Part shown: positions 1 through 63,470 of the stretch, piece after piece
Layout of the letters: each line of letters begins with the position of its first letter
How positions within the stretch are numbered: position 1 is the first letter of the stretch
Assembly: GCA_002269645.1 (NCBI GenBank)
Contig: NIVC01002092.1
Span: 124,001 to 188,000 of the forward strand
DNA from: Macrostomum lignano
Taxonomy: Eukaryota
Direction: 5' to 3'
DNA: 64,000 nt
The notes under the pieces: model-generated
What the model saw: only the letters and a program-made list of their open reading frames with translations
Told to the model about the DNA's origin: nothing
Databases searched by the model: none
Translations under genes and position numbers: made by a program

Positions 1-1466
1 TGCAGAGATGGCAACTCTACCCATTCCACTGACTCCTGAGCACAGGGGGTGTACAGCTGTGGCCCTGACTTTCTAATCGTCAGGCATGTACACTCGCTGT
101 GTCTTGGGGGTTGGGGGTTAACGACGATATGTATCGAAAATTACTTTGATTTCGCTGACACAGCGAATCAGAATTCAAATCGGTGCCACCGCCGAAGTTA
201 GAGTGGAACCCGCTCTCCTTCCCCAGATCGTTAAAATGACACCGCCAATCAGTGCTGAGACCTTTCGAAGTGGCCAGATTTTATTCATTATGACGGCCAG
301 ACTCAGTGGTTTGCAGTGGCCGGCCAAGTCCTGTGATTGCATTACCCCATCGGCCTAAACTGTCACACTAAACGCCCCCCGGGCCCGGCGTCAAGCGTCA
401 ACAAGGCGAGCGCGGGCACGGGTCGAACCGACTCTCCCAGGGATCAATACGATTTTGCCAGGACGGGGAACTGGTGTTGGGGCCTGAGCTCTATGGCCAA
501 AGACGCCGCAGAGGATGAGTAGGAGAATGCAGCGGATCAGGGGACGGGTGGGGTAAGGGAGAGGATGTAGGGATTCCCGAGACCAAGGAGACCTTGAACT
601 GAGATTCTGGAGTGTGTCAATTCCCCCCCCCCGAAATTCTCGTATACAGCCAATCTGCTCATTCTACCGTCAGCTTCAAGCATGAAAAACTTTACAGTAT
701 TCATTTTATGTCGAATGTGTGTTGCATGTGAAATATATAATTTCTGTTGAATTGAAGTAAAACTAGCCTTATAGAGTTGTCAATCCAGATTTTGGTTCTT
801 GGTGTCCCTGCCGTCAGCCGGGCTCGGGCAAGATTATTAACCTGTCAGGACGCGTTAAGCTGCATCGCTTCGCATCGGAGGAGCCCGGCAGGGACCGGGT
901 GCCGCCCGCCGCCTTGGGGATATTGGGAGAGAGCAGAGACGGAGGCGGCGACATCGAGCTGGTTTCCCGGACTGCCGGGTCAGAGAGTGATAGTGGATGC
1001 GACGGATTCAGGATGATATACAGGAGCGCCTCCTGCTGGTCCGCTCCAGCCCCGATTTTATGGCCCAGCCAGGAATTAATTACCTCTGGGCTGCGGGGGA
1101 CTCCGCTACAGACTGCTGCCTGGGCGAGGCGCTAGCAGACTGCCCCCCCCCGAGTTTGAGTAGAAGCTCGTGGAAGCTCATGATTTAACCGGCAGGAGGC
1201 AGCAATCGGAGCATGAAGCAAATGTTGAAAGGCAAAACACTTCTGCATTTGCTTCCTGACCGTTCCCAGGGGCTGCTCTTTGAGTAGGCTGAGGTCTCGA
1301 GGGACAACCGGCTTCGAACGAGTGAGAATGAAGACGGGGGACTTGCGGCAGCGAAGATTGTCTGTGAGACGGCTTAGGAAGCTGGAAGGGGGTGCTTGAG
1401 CTTAACTGCTGTGAGATAATGCGCCAGAGGTGAGAGGTTAAATGAAAAGGTTAGCAAAGACGGACT

Positions 1467-2157
<691 letters not shown>

Positions 2158-2523
2158 GATCAGCCATGTCTGGCTCCAATCGGCAGGCGGCAAGCCAGGC
2201 GGAATCAAGGATCCCTGAGCAAAGCTATTTGAGTCTTCCCAAACTTCTCCTCCCATTTCCAGTCTCCTGGCGGTCAGTCTAGCGAGCCACAAGGGGGGAG
2301 GGCAGCGCAAACAGAGCCTTCGATTTCAGCAGCGGAGGCAGCTCACCGGCTTGTTTGGCGTGTAGTTTTGCTAATTGAGATTTTGGCACGGCAGCTGCCC
2401 GCCCCCATTGCTGGATTAATTCTGTACCCCAGCTGGCTGCGCTCTCCCATGCGCACTGGGTTGCGAAGGGAACTTTGGAATGAAAATACACTGCTTTAAC
2501 TGTTTTGGTTGTACCTTTGAGCG

Positions 2524-26010: not shown

Positions 26011-27699
26011 TCATTCCGGTGGCAGCAGGCCAATATTGGCGGCGAACTCCAGCAGGGCCAGGTGGCAGAACACGTACTGCTCGGCTGTCTGGATGGAGCC
26101 GGCTCGCTGTTCCCTCAGCTTCAGCACGGTGCCAAGCAGGTCCACCTCGCCGGTGTCAACCAGGCGCCGCATAGCGATGTCGACAGTCAGGAAGGTGCCA
26201 GTCCGCCCGATGCCAGCCGAGCAGTGCACCAGCACGGGGCCGCGGCGCTCCTTTGCCACGCTGCGAACTTGATCGAGGAATTTCAGGAAGGATCCGGCGG
26301 CGTGCGGGATGCCAAAGTCCGGCCAGCTGGTGAACTGCAGGTGAGTGACGCTCCGGCAGCTGTCACGCTGCGTTATCGTCAGCTCGGTAGTTACTAAATC
26401 CTCTTGATCGTCTACTGATTGACACGTGACTGTGACGTCGCCGTACGTCTGCGACTCGCCTGGCGACTTCGGCCAGTACAGCGCGCACTTGGTTCGCCTG
26501 CCCTCCACTAGGCGGGTTGTCATGACGATGACGCCCACGTTGTTCTGCCAGACCATCGACCAGAAGTCCGGCACTGTGTGCGGCAGGGGGCCCTGTGGGG
26601 TTTGAGATAGGAACGGATTCGTGTGACCTGGAATTCGGATTGGAGACACCTGGGATTCGGATTGGAGACACCTGGGATTCGGATTGGAGACACCTGGGAT
26701 TTGGATAGGAGACACCTGGGATTTGGATTGGAGACACCTGGGATTTAGAATGGAGATACCTGGAATTCAGGATGGAGATACCTGGAATTTAGAATGGAGA
26801 TACCTGGGATTCAGGATGGAGATACCTGGAATTTAGAATGGAGATACCTGGGACTCCAGACAGTCGTTGCCTTTACCTGAGTGCAAATGTAGGCATTGGC
26901 CTGCTGGTAGCCATCCACCCAGTTGGCGTGCACATAATCCGAGTCACCGCCTTTCAGCCGCACCCGGCTAGCATCCAGACAGGGCACATCGGCGTACCGG
27001 TTCCTGTCCCGGTTGCGGCGAAACGCGTCGCAAGGCCGGTCGCTGCCCCGGTCGGGGCCCAGCTTGCTGTTGAATTCCTCAACCAGGCCTTCCCGTTGCA
27101 TAGCAGAGATGCGGGCAGCGAAGGCGGCCAGCGACATGCTTTTGCTTCGCGTATTCTTGTCGTCGTTGATTTTCGAGCCGCCGTCGCCGCTTCTCTTCTT
27201 CGACGGCGAATTGCCGCCGCTGCCGCCGCTGACGCCGCCGCCGTCGATGCTGGGTGACCGCTTCCGGCTGGAGCTGCCGTTGCCGCTGGCGCCGCTGGCG
27301 ATGACAACGGAGTCCGTCATGCTGACGCTGCCGTCAAGCAGCCAGTCGCCGCCTCCGCCGCCGCCAACGCCTCGGCCAGTTCCGGCGCTGCCGGAATCGT
27401 CAGTAAGGCTGCTGGTGTCGGAGGCGGCGCCTGACCCAGATTGGAGCCCGCCGCCGACGCCGCCGCGAGTGAAATAATCGGGCGGCAGGGTGCGGCCCAT
27501 TCGGCGGCAGGCCTCGCGCAGCCAGGCCTGGTGGTCGTGCGCCCGGGTGCCGCCCAGGCTGCCTGGCAGAACCTCCAGCGGCAGGTGGCTGCTGATGGTG
27601 CTGCTGTTCACTATGAACACCCGGTCGCGTGGCTTTTCGCGCACGAACATCCGCAACACCTGAGAGATGGCGAATGAATAGATAGATAGATAGATAGAC

Positions 27700-27734
<35 letters not shown>

Positions 27735-27735
27735 C

Positions 27736-27782
<47 letters not shown>

Positions 27783-27783
27783 C

Positions 27784-27834
<51 letters not shown>

Positions 27835-27835
27835 C

Positions 27836-27914
<79 letters not shown>

Positions 27915-27915
27915 C

Positions 27916-27946
<31 letters not shown>

Positions 27947-27947
27947 C

Positions 27948-27986
<39 letters not shown>

Positions 27987-28036
27987 CAGATAGATAGATA
28001 GATAGATAGATGGATAGATGGATAGATGGATAGATG

Positions 28037-28070
<34 letters not shown>

Positions 28071-28123
28071 CAGATAGATAGACAGGCAGACAGACAGGCA
28101 GACAGACAGACAGGCAGACAGGC

Positions 28124-28156
<33 letters not shown>

Positions 28157-28163
28157 GGCAGGC

Positions 28164-28234
<71 letters not shown>

Positions 28235-31200
28235 GTGCATGAATAGATAAGACTCCGACTAGAGAAAAATCAACTGAGAATCAGGAAAAGAAAATGATCT
28301 GGGAAATTAAAAGGAAGGCCCATTGAAGAAGCACGCACAAAAACCGGGATTAAGAAGCAGCAAAGAAGCCGAAGCAGCGCTTTCATCTAATTAATTTTAC
28401 ATAAGGCAGTTCGCCTATGCAGTGCAATTATGAAGCTTATTTTCAACCTTTTCTCTGACTTGATTAAGCTGCCCAATAATGAACAATTTTTCAGTTACAG
28501 CCAGCAAGTACAGTGCAAGGGATAAGCAAGCAGACACTGTTTAATAACGAAGAAGTTACCCAACTTAAGTCTAAAAACGGTAAAGCAGGAAATCTCGCAC
28601 GCATACTTATGCATCCCCTCACTGAGCTGAGCTCACAGAGATGATGCCTGATTAGTTCCTCACTACTTTCCCATCCCCCCAGTGCATACGAGATTACTAT
28701 AGCGCCAAGAGTCTCTGAAGCGAAATAAACGCTTAAGCCGCTCTCTCTCCCGCCGCGGGTCCCCTCATCAACAGTAAAGCCCGTATAGTCGGGCTGGCAA
28801 TAAAAGTACAAGCCTGTTGTAGACTTAAACTAACTGAGTAGACTGTACGTCTAACATGGGACCGGCTTCGATTATAATAGTAAATTAATATATGAAGCTA
28901 GTGATAAAATTTCGAGACAACTCTGGGTAAACGGCTAGAGCAATTATGGCTGTCTTTAAAGTTTTAAATCCCTCGCCATCTAATGATTTTAGAAAATTTA
29001 ATATAATATTCAAATCAGTGTTGAAATTCTCCTGATTATCAGCCATGGCCCTAACAAGAGTGTGTCCATAGTTTCAGAGCTCTATTCATGCCGAATCTCT
29101 GCCGTACCTCTGCTCATTCAGCTATAAAACATGCCTTAAATACACTGAAGCAGGAGAGAAATTAATGCCGAACAATGTTAGCAATTGTCCCACGAATTTT
29201 ATTGGCCTTAACTGAAGAAACTCTACTATAATAATAATAACTAAAGCAGACTTCTCACGATATTTTTATACGCACAAACGTTATTCTCTTGTCTAATATA
29301 CTCGTAAATCGCGGGTCAGCTTAGCTTAGCTTATATGTGGATGGGGCGCATTAAGCGCGCATTTAAAATGCACGAGTCTGGCATAAGCGCGCGTTTAAAA
29401 TGCACGAGTCTGGCATAAGCGCGCGTTTAAAATGCACGAGTCTGGCATAAGCGCGCGTTTAAAATGCACGAGTCTGGCATAAGCGCGCGTTTAAAATTCA
29501 CGAGTCTGGCATAAGCGCGCATTTAAAATCGAACTTCATGTAAAATTGTGCTCTTCTGTCTCAGTCGTACAAATTGCCTGCGCGCTTCTTTACAAACTTT
29601 CAAACCCTTTCCTAGAACCCAAACCATAATAACCCTCACTGCCTAAATTGCCGACAGCCACATGACTGACATTCGTAACTACTTGGATGTAATTTTGAAT
29701 TAAAATTTACAAATTCAAACTTTTTACGCTGCCCTTAATATTGAAAGTTTCATTCAACGCGAATTTATCGAGTCAACCTGCTAGCACTGGGCACCCAGCT
29801 GTAGCCAAAAGCCACAAGTGTACATTCAGGCTAGTTAAGATAAACATTAAACTATAGTCAGCAGTGTTGATTGAAACCAGACTAAATTAAAAGCCTCTAA
29901 ACATAGAAGAAACTTGAAGATTTTCCACCAGAAAGTGCTGCTGCGGCTGCAAATAGTTTCCGGAGTGGGGCTTAGAAAACAAAGCCAGGGTCACAAGCAG
30001 AGCCTGTAGGTCTGTACAATCGTTCATTGGTAAGAACTGCGTAAATCAATCAAGTCAGACATGTGTTTCACTTCAATTTGCTCAATGGGGGAGTTGCTGA
30101 AATGCCATGGCTCAATGGGGGAGTTGCTGAGATGCCATGGATCAATGGGGGAGCTGCTGAAATGCCATGGCTCAATGGGGGAGTTGAATATTAAAATCGA
30201 AGCCAGCTCGCGTCTCACCTGAAACGGAGCCTTGAACCAAATAGGCGCGGTCACAATCAGCACCTTCTTCAGCCTGGCGGGATAATTGCCCTTGAGCATA
30301 TTAAGTATCCGAATGCTCAAATCGTAGTCAAAGTTGCCGTACTTGGAGCCGGTCATGTCGTAGACGAACACGAGGCCGTTCTCCTGGGCCGAGTCGACGG
30401 CTAGGGCGGCGTCCAGCTGAAAGATGAGGCTCTTCAGGGTGTCCCGGTGCGTGGTCTCGGGTGGCCGGTGCCTGCAGGCGGTGAACAGGGCCACTACTGA
30501 GTCACTGGAACTCTGTCCGGGCACGATGGTGAGCTTCTCGGACAGCAGTTCAGCTCGGACGCCTTCGTCGCAGGGATCGATGTGCTCAAAGTATTCAACG
30601 CGGCGGAGTTTCTCGTGCGCAGCAAATAAATCAACGGCTCGTTGAACGTCCCACTTTCTGGCGCGGAGAAATTTTAACGAGACGGCGCGCTGTTGCGACT
30701 CGGACAGGAGGCGGAGGCGGTCGCCGCAGTGCGGGATTTGCCGGATCCGGTCGGCAAAGTTTTGCAGAGCCTTAGCAGTTTTAAAATTAGATTTATAGTT
30801 ATTTTACAATTGAGTAAACGGCGGGAGTAACTTAACGCCTCGTCATGTTATTAGCAAGCTCAAGTCTAAAATCTTATATCGAGGTTTTTGTTGGGATCCA
30901 ATTAACAGGTATGGCACTGAATTCACACCCAGAACCCAATTCAAAAGTTCATTTTTAAAAATTTATTTCTGGATTTTGCATTTGTTTGACAAAAAATGCC
31001 AGATTATTGATACTTATACTTAATCTTACTTAATATAATTGATATTTTGTAAAAACAAGCAAGGTAGCTACAAAAAGGCAATATCATTTAAACTAAGCAT
31101 CCTTACAAAAATGTATATATCTGAACATAACTACCTGTGACAAATATTTTAATAGATTTAGAATAACAATAGCTTTTTAACCACAACAAATATGAATATA

Positions 31201-46200: not shown

Positions 46201-48597
46201 GCAAGCGGCACATTAATCTTACCCCGGCCACTCTTCCGCTTGGCTCCTGAGTTGGTTCCGTTGCACCAGAGAAGAGCCATTTTATCCACGGGTCTGAATT
46301 CGTTCGTGTCGGCCTCTGGCTGGCGCTCATTGAACCCCATTGCGTTTAACATCTTCCTACAGCTGGGTGTGTTGGGGGTCAGGCAATCTTCCTTAATTCT
46401 TTCTTCCTGAAAGGAAGAGGAGGGGAGGAGAAAGAGGAAGGAGAGGAGGGAGAGGAGGGAGAGGAGGGAGAGGAGGGAGAGGAGGAATAGGAGAAAGAGG
46501 AAGGAGAGGAGGGAGAAGAGGGAGAGGAGGTAGAGGAGGGAGAGGAGGGAGAGGAGGGAGAGGAGGGAGAGGAGGAATAGGAGAAAGAGGAAGGAGAGGA
46601 GGGAGAGGAGGGAGAGGAGGGAGAGGAGGGAGAGGAGGGAGAGGAGGGAGAGGAAGGAGAGGAGGGAGTGGAGGGAGAGGATGGAGAGGAAAGAGAGGAA
46701 GGAGAGGAGGAGAGGAGGGAGAGGAGGGAGAGGAAGGAGAGGAGGGAGTGGAGGGAGAGGATGGAGAGGAAAGAGAGGAAGGAGAGGAGGGAGAGGAGGG
46801 AGAGGAAGGAGAGGAGTGAGAGGAAGGAGAGGAGGGAGATGAGGGAGAGGAGGGAGAGGAGGGAGAGGAGGGAGGAAGGGAGAGGAGGGAGAGGAGGGAG
46901 AGGAAGGAGAGGAGGGAGAGGAAGGAGAGGAGGGAGAGGAGGGAGAGGAGGGAGAGGAGGAAGAGGAGGGAGAGGAGGGAGAGGAGGGAGAGGAGGAAGA
47001 GGAGGGAGAGGAGGGAGAGGAGGGAGAGGAGGGAGAGGAAGGAGAGGAGGAAGAGGAGGGAGAGGAGGGAGAGAAAGGAGAGAAAGGAGAGGAGGGAGAG
47101 GAAGGAGAGGAAGGAGAGGAAGGAGAGGAAGGAGAGGAAGGAGAGGAGGGAGAGGAGGAATAGGAGGGAGAGGAAGGAGAGGAGGAAGAGGAGGGAGAGG
47201 AGGGAGAGGAAGGAGAGGAAGGAGAGGAAGGAGAGGAAGGAGAGGAAGGAGAGGAGGGAGAGGAGGGAGAGGAGGAAGAGGAGGGAGAGGAGGGAGAGGA
47301 GGGAGAGGAAGGAGAGGAGGGAGAGGAAGGAGAGGAAGGAGAGGAAGGAGAGGAAGGAGAGGAGGGAGAGGAAGGAGAGGAAGGAGAGGAAGGAGAGGAA
47401 GGAGAGGAAGGAGAGGAAGGAGAGGAAGGAGAGGAAGGAGAGGAAGGAGAGGAAGGAGAGGAGGCAGAGGAAGGAGAGGAGGAAGAGGAGGGAGAGGAAG
47501 GAGAGGAGGAAGAGGAGGGAGAGGAGGGAGAGGAAGGAGAGGAAGGAGAGAGGGAGAGGAAGGAGAGGAAGGAGAGGAAGGAGAGGAAGGAGAGGAGGCA
47601 GAGGAAGGAGAGGAAAGAGAGGAGGAAGAGGAGGGAGAGGAAGGAGAGGAGGAAGAGGAGGGAGAGGAGGAAGAGGAAGGAGAGGAAGGAGAGGAGTGAG
47701 AGGAAGGAGAGGAAGGAGAGGAAGGAGAGGAAGGAGAGGAGGGAGAGGAAGGAGAGGAGGAGAGGAGGGAGAGGAAGGAGAGGAAGGAGAGGAAGGAGAG
47801 GAAGGAGAGGAAGGAGAGGAAGGAGAGGAAGGAGAGGAAGGAGAGGAAGGAGAGGAGGGAGAGGAGGGAGAGGAAGGAGAGGAAGGAGAGGAAGGAGAGG
47901 AAGGAGAGGAAGGAGAGGAAGGAGAGGAAGGAGAGGAGGGAGGGAGAGGAGGAGGAGGAATAGGAGAAAGAGGAGAAAGAGGAAGGAGAGAAGGGAGAGG
48001 AGGGAGAGGAAGGAGAGGAAGGAGAGGAAGGAGAGGAGGGAGAGGAGGGAGAGGAGGGAGAGGAAGGAGAGGAGAAAGAGGAGGGAGAGGAGATATGACT
48101 AAGGGAGTTAAAAGTTTTCTCGTACGATCGATTTCAAATGAAATTTTACCTGCGGTTTGACCCTATACTATAGTAAAAATACAGCACAGCATGCTCACAT
48201 TAATTCACCGTGAGAATAGAAAATAAAGTACTCCCCGCGCAGTGTGGTGTATCGTTCTCGAAACAGGGCGGCCCATTGTCTCGGCATCGTAGTTATCAGA
48301 CAACAGACGTCGACGCGGCGCAGACGGCGTCGGAGCGGCCGTCAGTAGGTCAGCTGAGTCGGTGTGCATAACACTCGCGAGATTGGCCTCGCAGGTGCGA
48401 GCGTCAGCTGTCGCATTGGTGCACGAAACGGTGTCAATTGAAAGGTTGGATTCAGTTTCAACAAGGCCGATGGAGCCTTGAACGCAGACTCGATAGTCTC
48501 TGCGACCGTTTTTCAAGCGCATTCTTAGCTTGTCATCGACTGTCGCCGAGGATAAATACAGCAAATTGCGCTCATCAACGGTGGCTGATACGCTCAT
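43202..48597 (-). CDS. TTLL10: TTLL10-like tubulin glycylase (TTL domain), ~550 aa; exons 48209-48597, 48150-48162, 46223-46406, 44581-44769, 43202-44079
   Basis: TTL motifs: MKPGHADCGEGI, MQRYVHPPLLLEGRKFDLRVY, HLTNQAVQ, FELFGCDFLIG..VWLLELNSDPSL. HLTNQ and the RGQ tail resemble TTLL10. Phases 2,0,1,1 are consistent; total 1653 nt. The start codon and the 44079 acceptor are less certain. Confidence 0.78.
45199..45495 (+). mobile_element. tRNA-derived CORE-SINE
   Basis: A box TAGTCTAGTGG and B box GGTTCGATTCC, followed by tgtgtccttgagcaagacacttaac...tgtaaaatggg (MIR/CORE-like domain) and an A-rich tail. Confidence 0.72.
46415..48092. repeat. ~1.7-kb polypurine (GAGGAAGGA/GAGGAGGGA)n tract
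   Basis: Almost exclusively G and A on the plus strand; TTLL10 intron. Confidence 0.95.
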
Positions 48598-56400: not shown

Positions 56401-56940
56401 TTATTTGCCCCAGCCAGGGGCGGGAGCGCGCTTACCCCATCCGGGAGCGCGCTTACCCCATCCGGGAGCGCGCTTACCCCATCCGGGAGCGCGCTTACCC
56501 CATCCGGGAGCGCGCTTACCCCATCCGGGAGCGCGCTTACCCCATCCGGGAGCGCGCTTACCCCATCCGGGAGCGCGCTTACCCCATCCGGGAGCGCGCT
56601 TACCCCATCCGGGAGCGCGCTTACCCCATCCGGGAGCGCGCTTACCCCATCCGGGAGCGCGCTTACCCCATCCGGGAGCGCGCTTACCCCATCCGGGAGC
56701 GCGCTTGCCCCAACCGGGAGCGCGCTTACCCCAACCGGGAGCGCGCTTATCCCAGTAGGCAGCATCGCTATCATCCTCAACGGCATCATCGTCGTCCATC
56801 GACTTGTCGGCTATCATGGATTCCAAGTCGTCGTCGAGTTTGCGTTCTCGATCTGGGTTCTCGGCGCCAGCAGCTGCAACAATGACAGCGACCGCGACAA
56901 TCAGCAATAGCAGCAATCGACTGGTTGCAAAGGCCGTCAT
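56401..56940 (-). CDS. APGWamide neuropeptide precursor, 179 aa
   Basis: Signal peptide MTAFATSRLLLLLIVAVAVIVAAAGA, an acidic spacer, then KR-(APGWGKR)x15-APAPGWGK-stop. A 5'UTR intron 56944-57066 (gtgaga...cttcag) ends 3 nt before the ATG, so the ORF-track start at 57006 is intronic. Confidence 0.93.
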   Translation of the reverse strand: MTAFATSRLLLLLIVAVAVIVAAAGAENPDRERKLDDDLESMIADKSMDDDDAVEDDSDAAYWDKRAPGWGKRAPGWGKRAPGWGKRAPGWGKRAPGWGKRAPGWGKRAPGWGKRAPGWGKRAPGWGKRAPGWGKRAPGWGKRAPGWGKRAPGWGKRAPGWGKRAPGWGKRAPAPGWGK

Positions 56941-57194
56941 TGTCTGAAGCACAACTCTTCCTTTACTTGTGCTTGTATTGTTTGCTGCAACAAGGTATAA
57001 AAACAAACTTTTACTATTTCAGTCGCAGCAAGAATAAGTTTTCTCAAAATAGACTTAGACTCTCACCTTTCCTAATTTACTTGCGGCAGAGCAGATTCGG
57101 GTTGATGAGAGTTCTTGGCCGCTGTTCACTGAATGCCGGGGCTTTCAAGTCTGCAGTGTAGCGTGGGGAGAACAGTTGGTGAAATGCTCCAGCT

Positions 57195-57202
57195 TATTTA
57201 TA
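57195..57202 (-). promoter_or_regulatory. TATA box of the APGWamide gene
   Basis: TATAAATA on the minus strand, ~130 nt upstream of the 5'UTR exon donor at 57067. Confidence 0.5.
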
Positions 57203-59917
57203 CTGGAAAGAGGGAGAGTTTCTTTGGAACTCAGCGTCGGAACTCGGATTCATCTGTTTCGAACCAGACTGTGTGTCGCCTGTCAGAGCGGCTTGGCTTT
57301 AATCTTCATCTCGTTCCTGTTCTGTCAGCGGGGGTCCTTACTCTTGGGATTTTGCGCGCCTTGCTTATCCTCTTATAGTCCCTTTAAGATTCCTGCAGCC
57401 AATTCTGAAACATTTTCCGAGATTAAAAACGCCAAAAAGCAGATTAAGGATTAACAAACATGACTTTATGGGGAGTTTATTTAGTCATGATTAAACTCCC
57501 AACTCAAATTTGGCTGACAAATACCTGCCAAGGTTGTCGGATCAGTTTGACGTGCTGACCTCACCTACCGGCTAAGCCAGTGTCGCATGGAGCATGGAGC
57601 TGATGAATGTCTCTTCTTTTTTGGGCGCTAGTTCTTATCTAATCAAAGCATTGGCAAACTTGTCTCCTAAATTTAATGTTGGATTCATCCATGGCTGCCG
57701 CGCGTTTTAACACCGGATAGTTCTGTCTACGGATTTGAGTGCGGGACGTCTGTTCCTGCATCGCACAGCTTCCTTCACCCCGTTTAGGCGCAACTGCAAA
57801 ACTCCGATACTATCGGCGATTCCTTTTGGATAATCGGAGCACTTTTTTGGCAGTATCGAACATCGGTATACTTTCGATATAATTTTTCATTTTTTTACCG
57901 ATGAGTCAGATAATGCGTTAAATTAAAAAGTTAACAGATGTTTTGTACGCGGTAAAAAGTTATTATGAAACAAGAAGGCATATTATTAAAATATTGGTAA
58001 CATTATTACTGCCAGTGTCATTGACTCATTAAATTATCATTACAAAACCCTATGTATTTATCAATTATCATATTTCATGCTACAAGCTCTGCAACACTGT
58101 ATGATTATCGAGAGGTCACGCTTCACACACAACTGCCATGGCGTCGAGGCCGGTAGGCCGAGACGCGGTAAGGCAGTTGTGTGTGAAGCGTATCTCGATA
58201 GTGGAATTGTGTCTATTTTCGACCAAAAACCAATTCAAAACGGCTAGGATACAACTTCCCAGACGGGAATTGTTCACTAATCGATTCAAGGGATTTGTGT
58301 CATAGGCATTTTCCACTTGGCGCAAGCCAAATGATGGCCATAGACTAAACGTCTGGAACAAAAAGTTCAGCGGAGCAGCCTGAAATTATCATAGACGAAA
58401 CATGTTAAATAAAGTTATGGTCTTATAAGCTGGAACCCTGCAGCAGAGGATACATGTTTCTGTTTCCTCCGTTTGCCCTAACCTCTATTTATGCCACTCA
58501 TACGAATGATAAATTGGTCGAATTTGCCGATTGAAAGCGTTGACGGCTTGAATGGAAATGAGGTCAACTTTCTCAGCGACTTGAGTATGGGTGGACGTGA
58601 CGAGGCGGATGGCGAAGAGTTGATGGAGTTCATCCGATTCATTGAATGCGGTAACGATGATGCTCTGCCACCACTGCCAAGCAAAGAAGAGGCTTGCCCC
58701 GAGGATTCCATGCAGAACAAACCATGCAATTCGGCCGATGTGTGTAACGTCTAAAGACATTTCTTATTATTTTTTTTTCGTACATTTATACAATCTGTTT
58801 ATTCAGCTTTGTTGTATTGAATAAAAAATATCCTCGCAAACGCATTGATACAGGAATATACAGATTGCTCATCTGCAAATGGGTATATCCAAATATAACC
58901 CGTTGGGAATATCCAAAGATGGGGACGGCTTGACCATAGACAATCCGCAGATAAGCAATCTGTTGTATTCCTGTTTCGATGCCTGAAAGGCGCGCAAAAA
59001 TTTACTTAGTTCACAATTTCCGTCGACGCAATCGTTTGTGGCCCAAACGAAACTAGACACAATGTCAGTCACTGATTGTAGATTGATTCTAAATGTTTTT
59101 TATTATCATACGAGAAAATTCTTTGAGTCCTTGAGCACGAGCATTTGCTTCAACTTGAGAATATTCTCCAAGTGCGAGCAAATCCTCAGCCACTTTAAAC
59201 CATAGACAAGACGTCTTCCCACTTGATTCCATTGACCTTTGCAGGCATCTGAAGCTTATACACCAATTATAGACTGGCTTGTGAGAAGGGAAACAGAAAG
59301 AGAAAGAAAAAGCAAGGCATTTCTTACAAGAATGGAAACGCAGTGACTTTTACCGGCTGAGTCAGCTTTACTGACTGACACTTTTACTGACTTTTACGAG
59401 CTACCTCACTTTTTCTTGAGCAAATCTAGCTTCGCAATTTAGTTTATGGTGCGGTTTTTATTCATACTAGCAGAAGTAAATGCCCAGACGTTGAGAATAT
59501 TGAGCAACAGCTCAGGAGCAAGAACTCCTGAACGAATGCTCATGAGCTCTTGCTCACTTTATTCATGCAGACCAGAGTCGATGCTTGAGCTTGAGCAACT
59601 GCTCACTTTATTCATACGGCCTATTGTCTCTGCAAAATGCTTATTATCAGTTACTTTTATTCACAAAATCTTTCACTCTGGAGTGCTGGTGTGCAAAAGC
59701 GCCCCGCCCCTTTGATTAGCGCCCCCTTGACCCCGCTGTCTTCTGACTTTGCCATAGACATTTTCAGCGGGCCGTGAAACCGACTGAATACATTGGAGTA
59801 AATGGGATTTTACCATAGACAGTCTCAGCGGGCCGTGCTTCGCGCCTCGGCATTATAGATCGTTTCTGCCCTTTGCAGCCCATCAACATTGGTATACGGC
59901 ACCTTCTAGCCATTTTG

Positions 59918-60086
59918 GTTTGGGCCATAGACTACTTTGACTAGGCAAAGCCACGGTCTCCGTGTCAACTTTTGAAAGCCCCAATAGGAAAATTGACTGC
60001 AAAAAGCGTTAATCTACACATATGAAGGTTCAAGCTTGATTCATAGGCTCTTTCTTTACCAGTGAAATGGCTGTCTATGGCCAAAC
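59918..60086. mobile_element. Short MITE-like inverted repeat
   Basis: ggtttgggccatagac ... gtctatggccaaacc. Confidence 0.35.
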
Positions 60087-60714
60087 CTCGCTAAGAAATG
60101 AAGCCTGAGAACTCGAAACGAGGTCAATCAACCAATTCACAGGCCTGAAAACGAGGCCAGTAAACTTTGCTTTGTTTAAACAAATTCGATAGGTAACAAA
60201 CTCAGTAACGGAAATCGGCGAATCATATTACATTGTCCATTCGGTTAATTGTACATAAGGTAACCCGAAGGTCACTCCGTTAACACCGTCTCACCGTTGA
60301 CCGTCATACTCTTCTTCTTAGCGGGAACACTGATCTTCTCAGACTCGGGATTCAATGTAGGCTCAATGGATGCCACGGGTCCAGGCTCAATGGACTGCGC
60401 CCATCCATACCCCCACTTATGTGGGGCTTCCGATATCAAGGACGACTCAGGTATAAGGACGGGAAACCTCGTTTCTTGGAAACTTTAGGAGCCAGGTTTT
60501 CCGAAAGAATACACTACGGAGATAGGAAGTTTTCATTTTTCAGCACAAAAATTGTTATTGCTTTCGATGGGAGGCGGATCCAGTGTTCTTCTTTTGATAT
60601 TTTGTGCCGTTCTTACAGCTCTATTCATATTCATAAATTTTTTTGTTCAGAAAATTAGGATTCCATGTTAATTATTTATTCTACGTACATTCCCTGCGCC
60701 TAAAAACCATTAAA

Positions 60715-60843
60715 ATGGCACGGCTCGGTTCATTGGTTTTACGTATTTTCTCGTATTTTATCATTCTAAGCTGACTGTGTAACAATATGTGTAACAGAGA
60801 TCATAAAATAGATTCATAAAACCAATGAGCCGAGCTGTGCCAT
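60715..60843. mobile_element. 129-bp MITE
   Basis: 27-bp TIRs matching at 25/27: atggcacggctcggttcattggtttta / taaaaccaatgagccgagctgtgccat. Confidence 0.6.
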
Positions 60844-61341
60844 GCATTTGAAAAGCTAATCGAATTGGGGTATCGGAATATCGCATTCAACCGATACTTT
60901 CATGTATCGCGTCTAACATTTATTTCTATTTCGGAGAATTGAAGCCCAATTGTTTTGTCAATGTGGATATTAAAATTTAACCACATTCAAAGTTCCGAAG
61001 CTACGTCTACTGACAATATTTTTTGCTAGTAATTATGTTTAACAGTATAAACTCTCAGCTCAGCTAACGCAGTAGTAAATAGTAGCTATTCTCATAAGAA
61101 CCAACGCAATCTTAAAGATTCCTCATAAAAGATGGTTGACATGCGGTTATTTTAAGAAACAATAAATAGTCATGCCCCAGGTCTCATTGCGCCGACCTGC
61201 GGAAACCTGATGCGGGCTCGGCGTCGAAAGTTATTAGGGGGTCCGACTGAGTGCAAATTCAACTGTCCAGTTTATTTGTTTAACACGACACATCTGTCAT
61301 TTCTAATGCTGGTTCACGGTAGCGCAGATATTGCGTCTCTC

Positions 61342-62344
61342 TCAGGCGTTGTCAAACTCGACGCCCGCTTGGTCTCCGGAGGTGGTCGGTTCCGCAAAAA
61401 TGGGACGAATCTCCCATTGGGAATAGCCGGCGTAGTCTGCGGCCGGTTCGCCGCCGTACCGCCGCTTGCCCCAGCCGATGGAACGGTGCGGCCGCTGCCG
61501 ATGATGAAGCCGCTCGAGATGCTGGGCGACGGACCGGATAGTCACCGGAGTGCCTGAAGTTCAGAGACGCTCAGAGGTTGGCCTGTTCGACTCACAGCGC
61601 GTTGTGCCTGCCTGCAGTCAAAGTGCCCCCCCCGAGTTCCAATTCGTGCGCAGCTACATTGATTTGGAGCTCGTGCATGAAAACTCTCATTTAAATGAAG
61701 ACCAATCGACAAGGCACAGAGAGTGAAATACGCGGGGGGCTACTGTGCTAGTCCATATACTAAAATACACAGGGGGCTACTGTGCTAGTCCATATACTAA
61801 AATACACAGGGGGCTACTGTGCTAGTCCATATACTAAAATACACAGGGGGCTACTGTGCTAGTCCATATACTAAAATACACAGGGGGCTACTGTGCTAGT
61901 CCATATACTAAAATACACAGGGGGCTACTGTGCTAGTCCATATACTAAAATACACAGGGGGCTACTGTGCTAGTCCATATACTAAAATACACAGGGTGCT
62001 ACTGTGCTAGTCCATATACTAAAATACACAGGGGGCTACTGTACTAGTCCATATACTAAAATACACAGGGGGCTACTGTGCTAGTCATTATACTAAAATA
62101 CACAGGGGGCTACTGTGCTAGTCCATATACTAAAATACACAGGGGGGGGCTATACAGGCTTGATGATGAAGTAGTCAGGGTGGCTGTACACCCTGTGTGA
62201 GCGTGTGCCTGTGTGCTTTTCCATGTGCATGCTCCCTGTGGTAATTTTTTTTATTCAACCGAAAGAATACTCACCTTCGCAGTCGGCGGCCAGAGCCAGG
62301 ACCGCTGCACATGACAGCAGCAGGAGGAGACTGATCTTCGACAT
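61342..62344 (-). CDS. Putative secreted neuropeptide precursor, 97 aa (C-x5-C ... SIGWamide); exons 62275-62344, 61596-61607, 61342-61553
   Basis: MSKISLLLLLSCAAVLALA-ADCEG|TTRC|TPVTIRSVAQHLERLHHRQRPHRSIGW-G-KRR-YGGEPAADYAGYSQWEIRPIFAEPTTSGDQAGVEFDNA*. Both donors are gtgagt, acceptors are gcag and cttcag, all phase 1. AATAAA at 61271-61276. Confidence 0.78.
61727..62150. repeat. 37-bp minisatellite acacagggggctactgtgctagtccatatactaaaat
   Basis: About 11 copies in intron 1 of the new neuropeptide gene. Confidence 0.92.
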
Positions 62345-62984
62345 CGTTCCGGTCACTCAGAGAAGCTTTCAGGAGCGGTTACGGACTGTTGAAGGAGGTC
62401 GAACACCTTCGATATTTCTGATAAGCTCTGGCGCGAACCGATTACGACCCGAGCGAGTTTTATCCCAATTTATCCCCGACACGAGACCGGAAATTGGGAT
62501 GATGAGGCGCGGCAAGTTGCAGCGGCCCCTGTGCGGGTCCGGGATCTGGTTCATCATCCTGGAGTTAACTAACTGGGAGATGAGCGCATCGCTCTCACCT
62601 TATCCCCGGCTCCCTGCGCGTCTCAGTCGGGCACGCGAAAAACCTGGCAGTGTAAAAACAGCTACATAAATTACCTGCTCAGCTCTCACTTTCCGAAACA
62701 ATTTCTAGCTTAAAGTAATTTTTCATCGGCTAGTAGCGGAGTTTGCTATTCCGGTTGCCGAGGAGGGGCGTATGTCTCTTTGTTGTCATTAAGGCTGTAA
62801 TTTGTCAATGTGCTACATGCAGTGTTAACTAATGGAACAGGAGCCTTTTCAATTTCATGGTGTTGTGCCGGTCTCAGTGTAGCTGTTCACGATCCAGCTC
62901 ATTAAATTGTTGCAGAAACTCCCATCATTTAGAGTTTCCAACGCGCAGGACATCAATGGGACATTGACTTGGATTTGTTGACAC

Positions 62985-63470
<486 letters not shown>

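What the first reader, a model, noticed from the sequence alone, without database searches (positions are those of the whole stretch)
56401..62344. Two different GWamide precursor genes in tandem on the same strand
Seen in sequence: the new ...SIGW-GKRR gene ends ~4.4 kb upstream of the APGW-GKR precursor, both on the minus strand, with no supportable gene between them. Established: APGWamide shares its PGWamide end with RPCH/AKH of the GnRH superfamily, and a relationship has been proposed. Inference: physical linkage of a multi-copy APGWamide gene to a single-copy Q-x-x-H-x-S-x-GW gene could be a relic of tandem duplication and a co-regulated neuropeptide locus.
Basis: inference. Interest (0 to 1): 0.75.

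Follow-up and report, generated by a model that had tools for sequence, protein, structure and literature searches.

The report
Two linked GWamide neuropeptide genes, flatworm

Summary
The window is Macrostomum lignano contig NIVC01002092.1. On the minus strand lie two genes.

- Gene B (62344-62275 plus 61553-61342, 93 aa) is the annotated hypothetical protein Mlig012517.g1. It encodes a signal peptide and one ...RPHR-SIGW-GKRR site.
- Gene A (CDS 56940-56401, 179 aa), 4,401 bp downstream, encodes 15 APGW-GKR copies plus APAPGW-GK.

Nothing credible lies between them. The same order recurs on a second contig that is 95-98% identical, so there is no misjoin.

Gene A is the Macrostomum counterpart of planarian cpp-1, mollusc APGWamide and annelid RGWamide, which is a known kind. 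Gene B has no relative outside M. lignano among 1.8 billion representative proteins.

Gene B's Q-x-x-H-x-S-x-GW resemblance to GnRH/corazonin peptides is weak (shuffle P about 0.02 over eight templates). It lacks the family's aromatic residues. The Q lies 23 residues after the signal peptide. An RxxR site predicts SIGWamide instead.

A local duplicate of gene A is my preferred reading (about 0.4). No similarity beyond GWGKR supports it, and three mollusc-like loci showed no such neighbour.

Rotifer precursors that fuse an AKH-like peptide to APGW copies (published in 2023) keep a deeper link possible. Co-regulation is untested.

The parts
62275..62344 (-). Gene B (Mlig012517.g1) exon 1. ATG at 62344; signal peptide MSKISLLLLLSCAAVLALA|ADCE; ends in phase 1 at donor GAAG|GTGAGT.
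   Evidence: The spliced product is 100% identical to PAA60937.1.
61554..62274 (-). Gene B intron (721 nt, GT..AG). It contains a 37-bp tandem repeat (11.4 copies, 61726-62146). The intron is 905 nt in the duplicate contig.
61342..61553 (-). Gene B exon 2: pro-region GTPVTIRSVAQHLERLHHR, peptide region QRPHR-SIGW, amidation/cleavage signal GKRR, a 38-aa acidic C-terminal peptide, and the stop.
61459..61497 (-). Codons for QRPHRSIGW-GKRR. The RxxR site (RPHR|S) and GKRR predict SIGWamide. An alternative HHR|Q cut would give QRPHRSIGWamide.
   Evidence: The cleavage rules are established knowledge of prohormone convertases, and monobasic sites are noted in PMC8557429. The processing itself is inferred.
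61271..61276 (-). AATAAA polyadenylation signal of gene B, 66 nt after the stop.
56941..61341 (.). Spacer of 4,401 bp between the two coding regions, with no supportable gene. It includes gene B's 3' UTR and gene A's promoter and 5' UTR.
57195..57202 (-). TATAAATA box upstream of gene A, about 260 nt before its ATG.
   Evidence: This is a sequence motif only.
56985..57066 (-). Putative 82-nt 5'-UTR intron of gene A (AAAG|GTGAGA ... TTGTTGCAG|). Alternatively the AG at 56985 is a spliced-leader acceptor. The duplicate contig has an insertion of about 190 nt here.
   Evidence: Inferred; no transcript evidence was seen.
56401..56940 (-). Gene A CDS (179 aa, one coding exon): signal peptide MTAFATSRLLLLLIVAVAVIVAAAGA|E, acidic spacer, 15 x APGW-GKR, APAPGW-GK, stop. 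It is the M. lignano cpp-1/APGWamide precursor.

Best explanation
These are two separate, head-to-tail prepropeptide genes of Macrostomum lignano.

Gene A is the flatworm cpp-1 / mollusc APGWamide / annelid RGWamide-type gene. After signal-peptide removal, a prohormone convertase cuts at each KR, a carboxypeptidase trims the basic residues, and the C-terminal Gly is converted to an amide. This yields 15 APGWamide peptides plus one APAPGWamide per precursor.

Gene B is a Macrostomum-restricted single-copy gene that uses the same processing logic. It has a signal peptide, a 23-residue pro-region, an RxxR site (RPHR|S) and GKRR. The predicted product is one SIGWamide, possibly alongside N-terminally longer ...SIGWamide forms, plus an acidic C-terminal peptide.

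I think gene B most likely arose locally as a tandem duplicate of the neighbouring xxGWamide gene. It was reduced to one copy and diverged beyond recognition, so its peptide would signal through the same RGWamide-type receptor family.

Shown: the gene models, the adjacency, the family assignment of gene A, and the absence of relatives of gene B.
Inferred: the cleavage sites, the amidation, the duplication origin and the receptor.
For: - Gene models and adjacency. Gene B is identical to the RNA-seq-derived GenBank protein.
- The same two-gene order occurs on a second contig.
- Gene A matches about 80 APGWamide/'cerebral peptide 1' precursors, E down to 1e-51.
- Gene A aligns end to end with Smed-cpp-1 (E 1e-17). 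It shares with cpp-1 the termination right after the last copy and the lack of a C-terminal Cys domain.
- Gene B's 'R-SIGW-GKR' aligns only with the 'R-APGW-GKR' units of gene A, and RPHR is an RxxR convertase site.
- Tandem APGWamide-type paralogues probably occur elsewhere: P0055 and P0068 are both assigned to contigs of the same length, 3,254,727 bp, and so probably lie on one contig. This was not verified.
- A rough estimate from my own assumed gene numbers puts chance adjacency of two GWamide genes well below 1%.
- A third M. lignano variant (P0105) has 6 amino-acid changes, all in the signal peptide or C-terminal tail. None falls in residues 20-55, which hold the pro-region, peptide and GKRR.
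Against: - There is no protein or DNA similarity between A and B beyond the roughly 11-residue RxxGWGKR motif.
- Intron positions differ. B has a phase-1 intron after its signal peptide, whereas A's CDS is a single exon.
- B has one copy against A's 16.
- No orthologue of B is known, so age and history cannot be traced.
- The P0105 pattern is only marginal ((57/93)^6 = 0.05). It covers the whole 36-residue block, which fits a long peptide as well as it fits SIGWamide.
- Between the two assembly copies, the whole gene B block including the intron and 3' UTR is nearly identical. No purifying selection can be read from it.
- No peptide has been detected.
Confidence: 0.4

Rival explanations
1. Gene B is a strongly derived GnRH/corazonin/AKH-type gene that produces pQRPHRSIGWamide. 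The pair is then the split (or not-yet-fused) counterpart of the rotifer precursor, which carries an AKH-like peptide followed by APGW copies. Under this reading the linkage is ancient.
For: - Q1, H4, S6, G8 and W9 match the lophotrochozoan QNYHFSNGW and Smed-grh-1 QSYHFSNDW. Excluding G and W, the shuffle P is 6e-4 for one template and 0.02 over eight.
- Seven precursors have [SP]-xPQ(L/V/I)TFS(S/T)DWxG-G(K/R)R followed by APGW-GKR copies. Two are from Brachionus plicatilis and B. calyciflorus.
- The B. plicatilis precursor is published (PMC10730642).
- The 5'-to-3' order is the same as in the M. lignano pair. In B. plicatilis the two parts lie in separate exons split by a phase-1 intron.
Against: - Q is 23 residues after the signal-peptide cleavage site and needs a monobasic cut.
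- The family's aromatic residues are absent (P3, R5).
- The peptide is amidated at W with no C-terminal extension, and the associated peptide has no Cys pair.
- BLASTP finds no alignment with grh-1.
- Planarians keep a canonical GnRH-like gene in addition to cpp-1, so M. lignano probably has one elsewhere. This was not checked.
- The RGWamide/APGWamide receptor is placed in a different GPCR group from the GnRH and corazonin receptors (PMC8557429).
- There is no AKH-like motif near the APGW genes in L004-L006 or L009-L011.
Confidence: 0.15
2. Gene B is an unrelated, lineage-specific secreted-peptide gene. It sits next to the APGWamide gene by chance, and the shared GW-amide end is convergent.
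For: - No homologue of gene B exists anywhere.
- No similarity to gene A beyond the motif, and the exon structures differ.
- No such neighbour appears in three other species' loci.
- W-amide ends have arisen in several unrelated families, such as MIP (P0078, P0080 and P0083).
Against: Two GW-Gly-basic genes as immediate same-strand neighbours is improbable by chance. This rests on a rough estimate, not a computed genome-wide statistic.
Confidence: 0.3
3. Gene B is transcribed but is not a neuropeptide precursor. It would be a small secreted protein or a non-functional young ORF, and the GKRR is not processed.
For: - It is an orphan with no Pfam hit.
- One assembly copy carries a 1-nt deletion that frameshifts the tail.
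- No expression or peptide data were found.
Against: - It has a canonical AxA signal-peptide site, an in-phase splice, and a G-K-R-R directly after an aromatic residue.
- It is annotated from RNA-seq, and the peptide block is intact in all three variants.
Confidence: 0.1
4. The two genes form one transcription unit, either a polycistronic precursor resolved by spliced-leader trans-splicing or joined by alternative splicing. They would then be co-regulated by one promoter.
For: - About 7% of M. lignano assembled transcripts are multi-gene precursors (PMC5730564).
- The genes share a strand.
- An AG acceptor lies 45 nt before gene A's ATG. Splicing gene B exon 1 to it would stay in frame, but that is expected by chance about one time in six.
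Against: - Gene B has AATAAA 66 nt after its stop, and gene A has a TATAAATA box.
- The spacer is 4.4 kb.
- No good in-phase donor exists in gene B exon 2.
- GenBank lists gene B as a gene of its own.
Confidence: 0.1

Closest known systems
Planarian Smed-cpp-1 (cerebral peptide prohormone-1; VPGWamide/TPGWamide), within the mollusc APGWamide and annelid/nemertean/brachiopod RGWamide family
   Same: Gene A has a signal peptide, an acidic spacer ending aromatic-x-x-KR, and tandem xPGW-GKR units. Like cpp-1, the precursor ends with the last copy. It matches about 80 APGWamide precursors. Gene B shares only the R-xxGW-GKR unit.
   Different: Gene A has 16 near-perfect copies against 3 in cpp-1. 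Both flatworm precursors lack the two C-terminal Cys and the phase-0 intron that Thiel et al. 2021 describe for most APGWamide/RGWamide precursors. Gene B is single-copy, has S-I instead of x-P (or R), and carries a 38-aa C-terminal peptide.
Lophotrochozoan GnRH/corazonin-type precursors, e.g. Smed-grh-1 (QSYHFSNDWLPamide) and mollusc QNYHFSNGW...amide
   Same: Gene B is single-copy. Q-x-x-H-x-S-x-(G/D)-W is followed by Gly and dibasic residues, and an associated peptide lies downstream.
   Different: Gene B's peptide is not next to the signal peptide. Aromatic positions 3 and 5 are missing. There are no residues after W and no Cys pair in the associated peptide. BLASTP gives no alignment.
Rotifer APGW/AKH composite precursor (Brachionus plicatilis RNA39930.1; Cadena-Caballero et al. 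2023, PMC10730642)
   Same: One AKH-like W-containing amidated peptide lies upstream of APGW-GKR copies, in the same 5'-to-3' order as gene B then gene A. The two parts are in different exons.
   Different: In rotifers it is one gene and one signal peptide, with 2-5 APGW copies and a clear QLTFSSDWxG core. In M. lignano there are two genes 4.4 kb apart, each with its own signal peptide and stop, and gene B lacks the AKH core.

Membership tests
APGWamide/RGWamide (cpp-1) precursors - gene A | Several short xGW peptides, each followed by Gly and a dibasic site, downstream of a signal peptide | tested here: met
   15 APGW-GKR plus APAPGW-GK after an AGA|E signal-peptide site. Significant matches to named APGWamide precursors and to Smed-cpp-1.
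APGWamide/RGWamide (cpp-1) precursors - gene A | Two C-terminal Cys 20-30 residues apart, with a phase-0 intron between them (Thiel et al. 2021; stated for 'most' precursors) | tested here: not met
   The stop codon follows the last copy directly, and there is no GT donor before it. Smed-cpp-1 and the planarian-like P0098 lack it too, so this looks like a flatworm variant rather than an exclusion.
APGWamide/RGWamide (cpp-1) precursors - gene A | Peptides activate an RGWamide-type GPCR of the protostome RFamide/Wamide expansion | not testable with these tools
   This needs receptor identification in M. lignano and a cell assay.
APGWamide/RGWamide precursors - gene B | Multi-copy xGWamide architecture and detectable similarity to family members | tested here: not met
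   Single copy. The only similarity is RxxGWGKR. No family member was retrieved.
GnRH/corazonin/AKH-type precursors - gene B | A single peptide beginning with Gln placed directly (within a few residues) after the signal peptide | tested here: not met
   23 residues (ADCEGTPVTIRSVAQHLERLHHR) separate the AxA cleavage site from Q. Smed-grh-1 and the rotifer peptides have 0-4 residues there.
GnRH/corazonin/AKH-type precursors - gene B | Conserved core with aromatic residue(s) at positions 3-5, Ser/Thr, and Trp at 8/9 | tested here: inconclusive
   Q1, H4, S6, G8 and W9 are present. Aromatic positions 3 and 5 are P and R. Shuffle P is 0.02 over 8 templates.
GnRH/corazonin/AKH-type precursors - gene B | Gly plus dibasic amidation/cleavage signal after the peptide | tested here: met
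   GKRR. This feature is not specific to the family.
GnRH/corazonin/AKH-type precursors - gene B | Activates a GnRH/corazonin/AKH-type receptor, and no other canonical family member exists in the genome | not testable with these tools
   Only this window and two loci of the M. lignano genome were readable. No AKH/GnRH core is present in the 64-kb window or in 8.3 kb beyond it.

The most novel reading that the evidence does not exclude
The M. lignano gene pair and the rotifer AKH-APGW composite precursor may be two states of one ancient spiralian locus. In that locus a GnRH/AKH/corazonin-type single-copy peptide unit and the APGWamide/RGWamide repeat unit were neighbours, either as exons of one gene or as adjacent genes. 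APGWamide-type genes would then have originated from, or beside, a GnRH-superfamily gene. Gene B would be a highly derived remnant of that unit.
Probability: 0.12. Interest if true: 0.8.

Novelty: new member of a known kind. Interest (0 to 1): 0.4.

Why it matters
APGWamide was described in 1990 as 'related to RPCH', and its origin is still argued. Receptor phylogeny places it with the RFamide/Wamide systems. A rotifer precursor and the 'DNA loss model' papers tie it to AKH.

A flatworm locus in which a Q-x-x-H-x-S-x-GWamide gene sits directly upstream of the APGWamide gene would be a third, independent kind of evidence if the relationship were real. It also makes the question testable by simple synteny checks in other flatworm genomes.

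As the data stand, they show something more modest:
- the Macrostomum cpp-1/APGWamide gene, which is unannotated on this contig;
- a new orphan candidate neuropeptide gene (SIGWamide);
- a small two-gene Wamide cluster that would be convenient for transgenic reporter work in this model flatworm.

Tried and rejected
- **Homologues of gene B.** The word-indexed search of 5.8 billion proteins returned only M. lignano. The full HMMER scan of 1.84 billion representatives added only two spurious hits in long proteins.
- **Pfam.** No significant hit for either precursor. No Pfam, Rfam or tRNA signal for the spacer.
- **Similarity between A and B.** blastn-short and blastp found only the GWGKR codons or motif.
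- **Purifying selection from the two assembly copies.** Rejected. Gene B's exons are identical, but so are its intron and 3' UTR (1 mismatch in about 720 nt). The block is simply undiverged. Gene A's signal peptide and spacer diverge at the neutral rate.
- **Microsynteny.** I scanned 10 kb either side of APGWamide genes in three other long contigs (L004, L005, and L006 from Elysia crispata), and all of three short low-GC contigs (L009-L011). None has another W-amide or AKH-like motif. The flanks are short relative to mollusc gene spacing, so this is a weak negative.
- **Planarian linkage.** The only planarian-like cpp-1 hit (P0098) is on a 1-kb contig.
- **Neighbour-gene synteny.** The B. plicatilis locus and the window share no neighbouring gene families.
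- **Fused transcript.** Gene B exon 1 spliced to gene A's acceptor would be in frame, but that is a chance-level coincidence.
- **Gene naming as a clue to a shared transcription unit.** The 193-aa APGW protein of L002 is not in the protein collection.
- **Literature.** No paper mentions Mlig012517. The Piovani et al. supplement held no sequences.
- **Error on my side.** The true length is 179 aa. The conclusions are unaffected.

Full report
**Source and setting**

The window is 100% identical to Macrostomum lignano assembly GCA_002269645.1, contig NIVC01002092.1. This is a free-living flatworm of the Macrostomorpha.

Other genes in the window:
- a TMTC-type O-mannosyltransferase (about 8.7-15.8 kb, minus strand);
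- a CRAL-TRIO plus tyrosine-phosphatase gene (26-30.5 kb, minus);
- a tubulin-tyrosine-ligase-like gene (43.2-44.1 kb, minus);
- an MBOAT acyltransferase (50.7-54.2 kb, plus), which is the neighbour downstream of the APGW gene.

**The observation**

On the minus strand, gene A has a single coding exon from 56940 to 56401 and encodes 179 aa. It comprises:
- signal peptide MTAFATSRLLLLLIVAVAVIVAAAGA|E;
- an acidic spacer ending ..AAYWDKR;
- 15 perfect APGW-GKR units;
- a last unit, APAPGW-GK, followed at once by the stop.

TRF reports the 21-bp unit 15.9 times at 98% identity. Upstream lie a TATAAATA box (57202) and a possible 82-nt 5'-UTR intron or spliced-leader acceptor (57066-56985). These are sequence motifs only.

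Gene B needs two exons.
- The exon-2 ORF has an in-frame stop six codons before its first listed codon and no Met ahead of the peptide.
- 721 nt upstream lies an ATG-initiated hydrophobic exon (62344-62275) ending in GAAG|GTGAGT. It joins CTTCAG|GC.. in phase 1 and in frame.
- The product is MSKISLLLLLSCAAVLALA|ADCEGTPVTIRSVAQHLERLHHRQRPHRSIGW-GKRR-YGGEPAADYAGYSQWEIRPIFAEPTTSGDQAGVEFDNA.
- It is 100% identical over all 93 residues to GenBank PAA60937.1, 'hypothetical protein BOX15_Mlig012517g1'.
- That annotation was built from genome-guided RNA-seq assemblies (PMC5730564), so the splice and the expression have outside support.
- AATAAA lies 66 nt after the stop.

The stop of B and the ATG of A are 4,401 bp apart. 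In between:
- no ORF exceeds 92 aa and none reaches a Pfam cut-off;
- there is no Rfam family or tRNA;
- no AKH/GnRH-like core or further W-Gly-dibasic site in a plausible ORF is present;
- the public annotation calls nothing there on either contig.

**Not a misjoin**

Contig NIVC01000067.1 (L002) is collinear with window 55.3-64 kb at 95-98% identity. It carries gene B (P0002) and then, 4.8 kb on, the APGW gene (193 aa, 17 + 1 copies) in the same orientation. Such duplicated blocks are expected from the extra large chromosomes of the sequenced DV1 line.

This shows the assembly is sound. It does not show evolutionary conservation.

The APGW gene is not called on the window's own contig. Transcripts overlapping repeat annotation were removed before GenBank submission, which probably explains the omission.

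**What gene A is**

It retrieves about 80 precursors named APGWamide, APGW-amide-related neuropeptide or cerebral peptide 1, with E down to 1e-51.

[quoted passage not shown] It aligns with gene A from signal peptide to end (E 1e-17). It shares the aromatic-x-x-KR entry into the repeats and termination right after the last copy.

Thiel et al. 2021 (PMC8557429) showed three things:
- mollusc APGWamide is the orthologue of annelid, nemertean and brachiopod RGWamide;
- most precursors carry two C-terminal Cys split by a phase-0 intron;
- the receptor belongs to a protostome RFamide/Wamide GPCR expansion.

Gene A, Smed-cpp-1 and the planarian-like P0098 all lack the Cys tail, so this seems to be a flatworm variant. 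An APGWamide gene is also reported in a polyclad larva (PMC10396302). Gene A is therefore a new member of a known family.

**What gene B is**

The word-indexed search of 5.8 billion proteins found only M. lignano sequences. The exhaustive HMMER pass over 1.84 billion representatives added only two spurious hits in long proteins. There is no significant Pfam hit.

The architecture is that of a small prepropeptide: an AxA signal-peptide site, a pro-region, an aromatic residue followed by G-K-R-R, then an acidic tail.

Two N-termini are conceivable.
- Five residues later, RPHR|S is an RxxR convertase motif. It would release the tetrapeptide SIGWamide, the same size and C-terminus as APGWamide.

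A third M. lignano variant from another assembly (P0105) differs at six residues. All six lie in the signal peptide or the tail, and none in residues 20-55. That is marginal (about 0.05) and would fit a long 32-residue amidated peptide as well.

One assembly copy has a single-base deletion that frameshifts only the tail.

**Is gene B GnRH-like?**

The canonical flatworm example is Smed-grh-1. Its peptide QSYHFSNDWLP-GKR directly follows ..EICP of the signal region, and its associated peptide contains a Cys pair.

Gene B shares Q1, H4, S6 and W9 with it, plus G8 with the mollusc form. Shuffling the pro-region gives at least 3 identities outside GW with P = 6e-4 for one template and 0.02 over eight GnRH/corazonin/AKH templates.

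Several points count against membership:
- positions 3 and 5, aromatic throughout the family, are Pro and Arg;
- Q is 23 residues from the signal-peptide site;
- there is no extension after W;
- BLASTP finds nothing between the precursors.

Membership in the GnRH family is therefore not supported, though it is not excluded.

**Is the pair a tandem duplicate?**

Similarity between A and B is confined to R-xx-GW-GKR and its codons, and their intron positions differ.

On the other side, two GW-Gly-basic genes as immediate same-strand neighbours is hard to ascribe to chance. Assuming a few dozen neuropeptide genes among more than 20,000 loci, I estimate well below 1% even genome-wide. This is an estimate, not a computation.

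APGWamide-type paralogues also probably occur in tandem elsewhere. P0055 and P0068 are both assigned to contigs of 3,254,727 bp, and so probably lie on one contig; I did not verify this. I therefore prefer a local origin, with confidence of about 0.4.

**Evidence from other animals**

Within 10 kb either side of the APGWamide gene, three other long contigs (L004, L005, and L006 from Elysia crispata) carry no second W-amide or AKH-like motif. The same is true across the whole of three short low-GC contigs, L009-L011. This is a weak negative because the flanks are short.

Among the hits, seven short precursors carry a signal peptide, then xPQ(L/V/I)TFS(S/T)DWxG-G(K/R)R, then APGW/SPGW/RPGW-GKR copies. 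These are P0096 (Brachionus plicatilis), P0095 (B. calyciflorus), P0088, P0091, P0093, P0057 and P0084.

The B. plicatilis case is already published as an 'APGW/AKH precursor' (PMC10730642). In its gene, the AKH-like peptide and the APGW copies lie in different exons separated by a phase-1 intron.

The order, single W-amide peptide first and APGW copies second, is the same as gene B then gene A. This keeps open the reading that the Macrostomum pair is a split or unfused state of such a locus. I give it about 0.12-0.15, because gene B lacks the AKH/GnRH core.

**Transcription**

Separate signals argue for two transcripts: the poly(A) signal of B, the TATA box of A, and a 4.4-kb spacer. About 7% of M. 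lignano assembled transcripts are multi-gene precursors resolved by trans-splicing, so a joint unit cannot be excluded without long-read data. Splicing B exon 1 to A's acceptor would stay in frame, which is chance-level.

**Verdict**

The locus holds a known-family gene (cpp-1/APGWamide), a new orphan GWamide gene, and a real linkage of unproven meaning. Interest is moderate. It would rise sharply if linkage of APGWamide-type and GnRH-type genes were found in other flatworms.

Noticed in passing
window 56401-56940 (compare L002 15996-16577): The APGWamide gene is not among the called genes on this contig, although its near-identical duplicate on NIVC01000067.1 is called (193 aa). Transcripts overlapping repeat annotation were filtered before GenBank submission (PMC5730564), which probably explains it. 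The 193-aa protein is also absent from the protein collection.
   Followed up: partly
window 56421-56754 vs L002: The two assembly copies differ in repeat number: 15 + 1 APGW units here and 17 + 1 in L002. The last unit reads APAPGW here and ASAPGW there. Four of six substitutions in the signal peptide and spacer change the amino acid.
   Followed up: yes
window 61726-62146 (gene B intron): A 37-bp tandem repeat (11.4 copies, 97% identical) fills most of gene B's intron. The intron is 184 nt longer in L002, about five more units.
   Followed up: partly
L002 about 11125 (corresponds to window about 61390): A one-base deletion (GAACCGACC to GAA-CGACC) in the duplicate copy of gene B frameshifts the C-terminal tail (P0002, 102 aa) but leaves the peptide and GKRR intact. 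It could be a real mutation or a long-read indel error.
   Followed up: yes
P0105 (UniRef A0A1I8H0C9, other M. lignano assembly): A third variant of gene B has six amino-acid changes (S11L, C12A, P59S, T80A, G82E, Q84R). All are outside residues 20-55.
   Followed up: yes
P0034, P0042, P0043, P0054, P0071-P0074, P0079; L012 210-1040: Environmental (ENA/MERC) precursors of 230-276 aa carry 6-9 copies of (S/A)VNFSPGW-GKR or VNFSPSW-GKR and give faint Pfam AKH (PF06377) hits. The unit is the RPCH/AKH octapeptide core (compare pQLNFSPGWamide) without the N-terminal Gln, in multi-copy form. The organism is unknown. Papers containing 'VNFSPGW' were insect or crustacean AKH papers by title; I did not read them, so I do not know whether such a multi-copy precursor has been described.
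   Followed up: partly
L007 5001-5479 (Brachionus plicatilis REGN01000696.1); P0057, P0084, P0088, P0091, P0093, P0095, P0096: Composite AKH-like plus APGW precursors occur in at least seven sequences, not only the published B. plicatilis one. The residue before Q is always Pro, as in Smed-grh-1 (..CPQ). In B. plicatilis, exon 1 holds the signal peptide, AKH-like peptide and GKR. A phase-1 intron follows, then exon 2 with the APGW copies and exon 3 with the tail.
   Followed up: partly
L008 429-677 (P0098, Logan SRR22198335): An 82-aa precursor, ...FYQKR-VPGW-GKR-TYGWMKR-TPGW-GKR-ATEK, closely resembles planarian Smed-cpp-1. Like gene A, it lacks a C-terminal Cys domain.
   Followed up: partly
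window 62275/56985: Gene B exon 1 ends in phase 1, and the AG acceptor 45 nt upstream of gene A's ATG is open and in frame with it. A hypothetical exon-1(B)-to-gene-A splice would therefore read through. This is probably coincidence (about 1 in 6).
   Followed up: partly
window 1374-2310, 27400-28240, 62925-63468; 46668-48160: Long (AGAC)n-type microsatellites create spurious 'SVCL' ORFs. A purine-rich GGA/GAA tract of about 1.5 kb has extreme GC and AT skew. The window is very repeat-rich, as reported for this genome.
   Followed up: no
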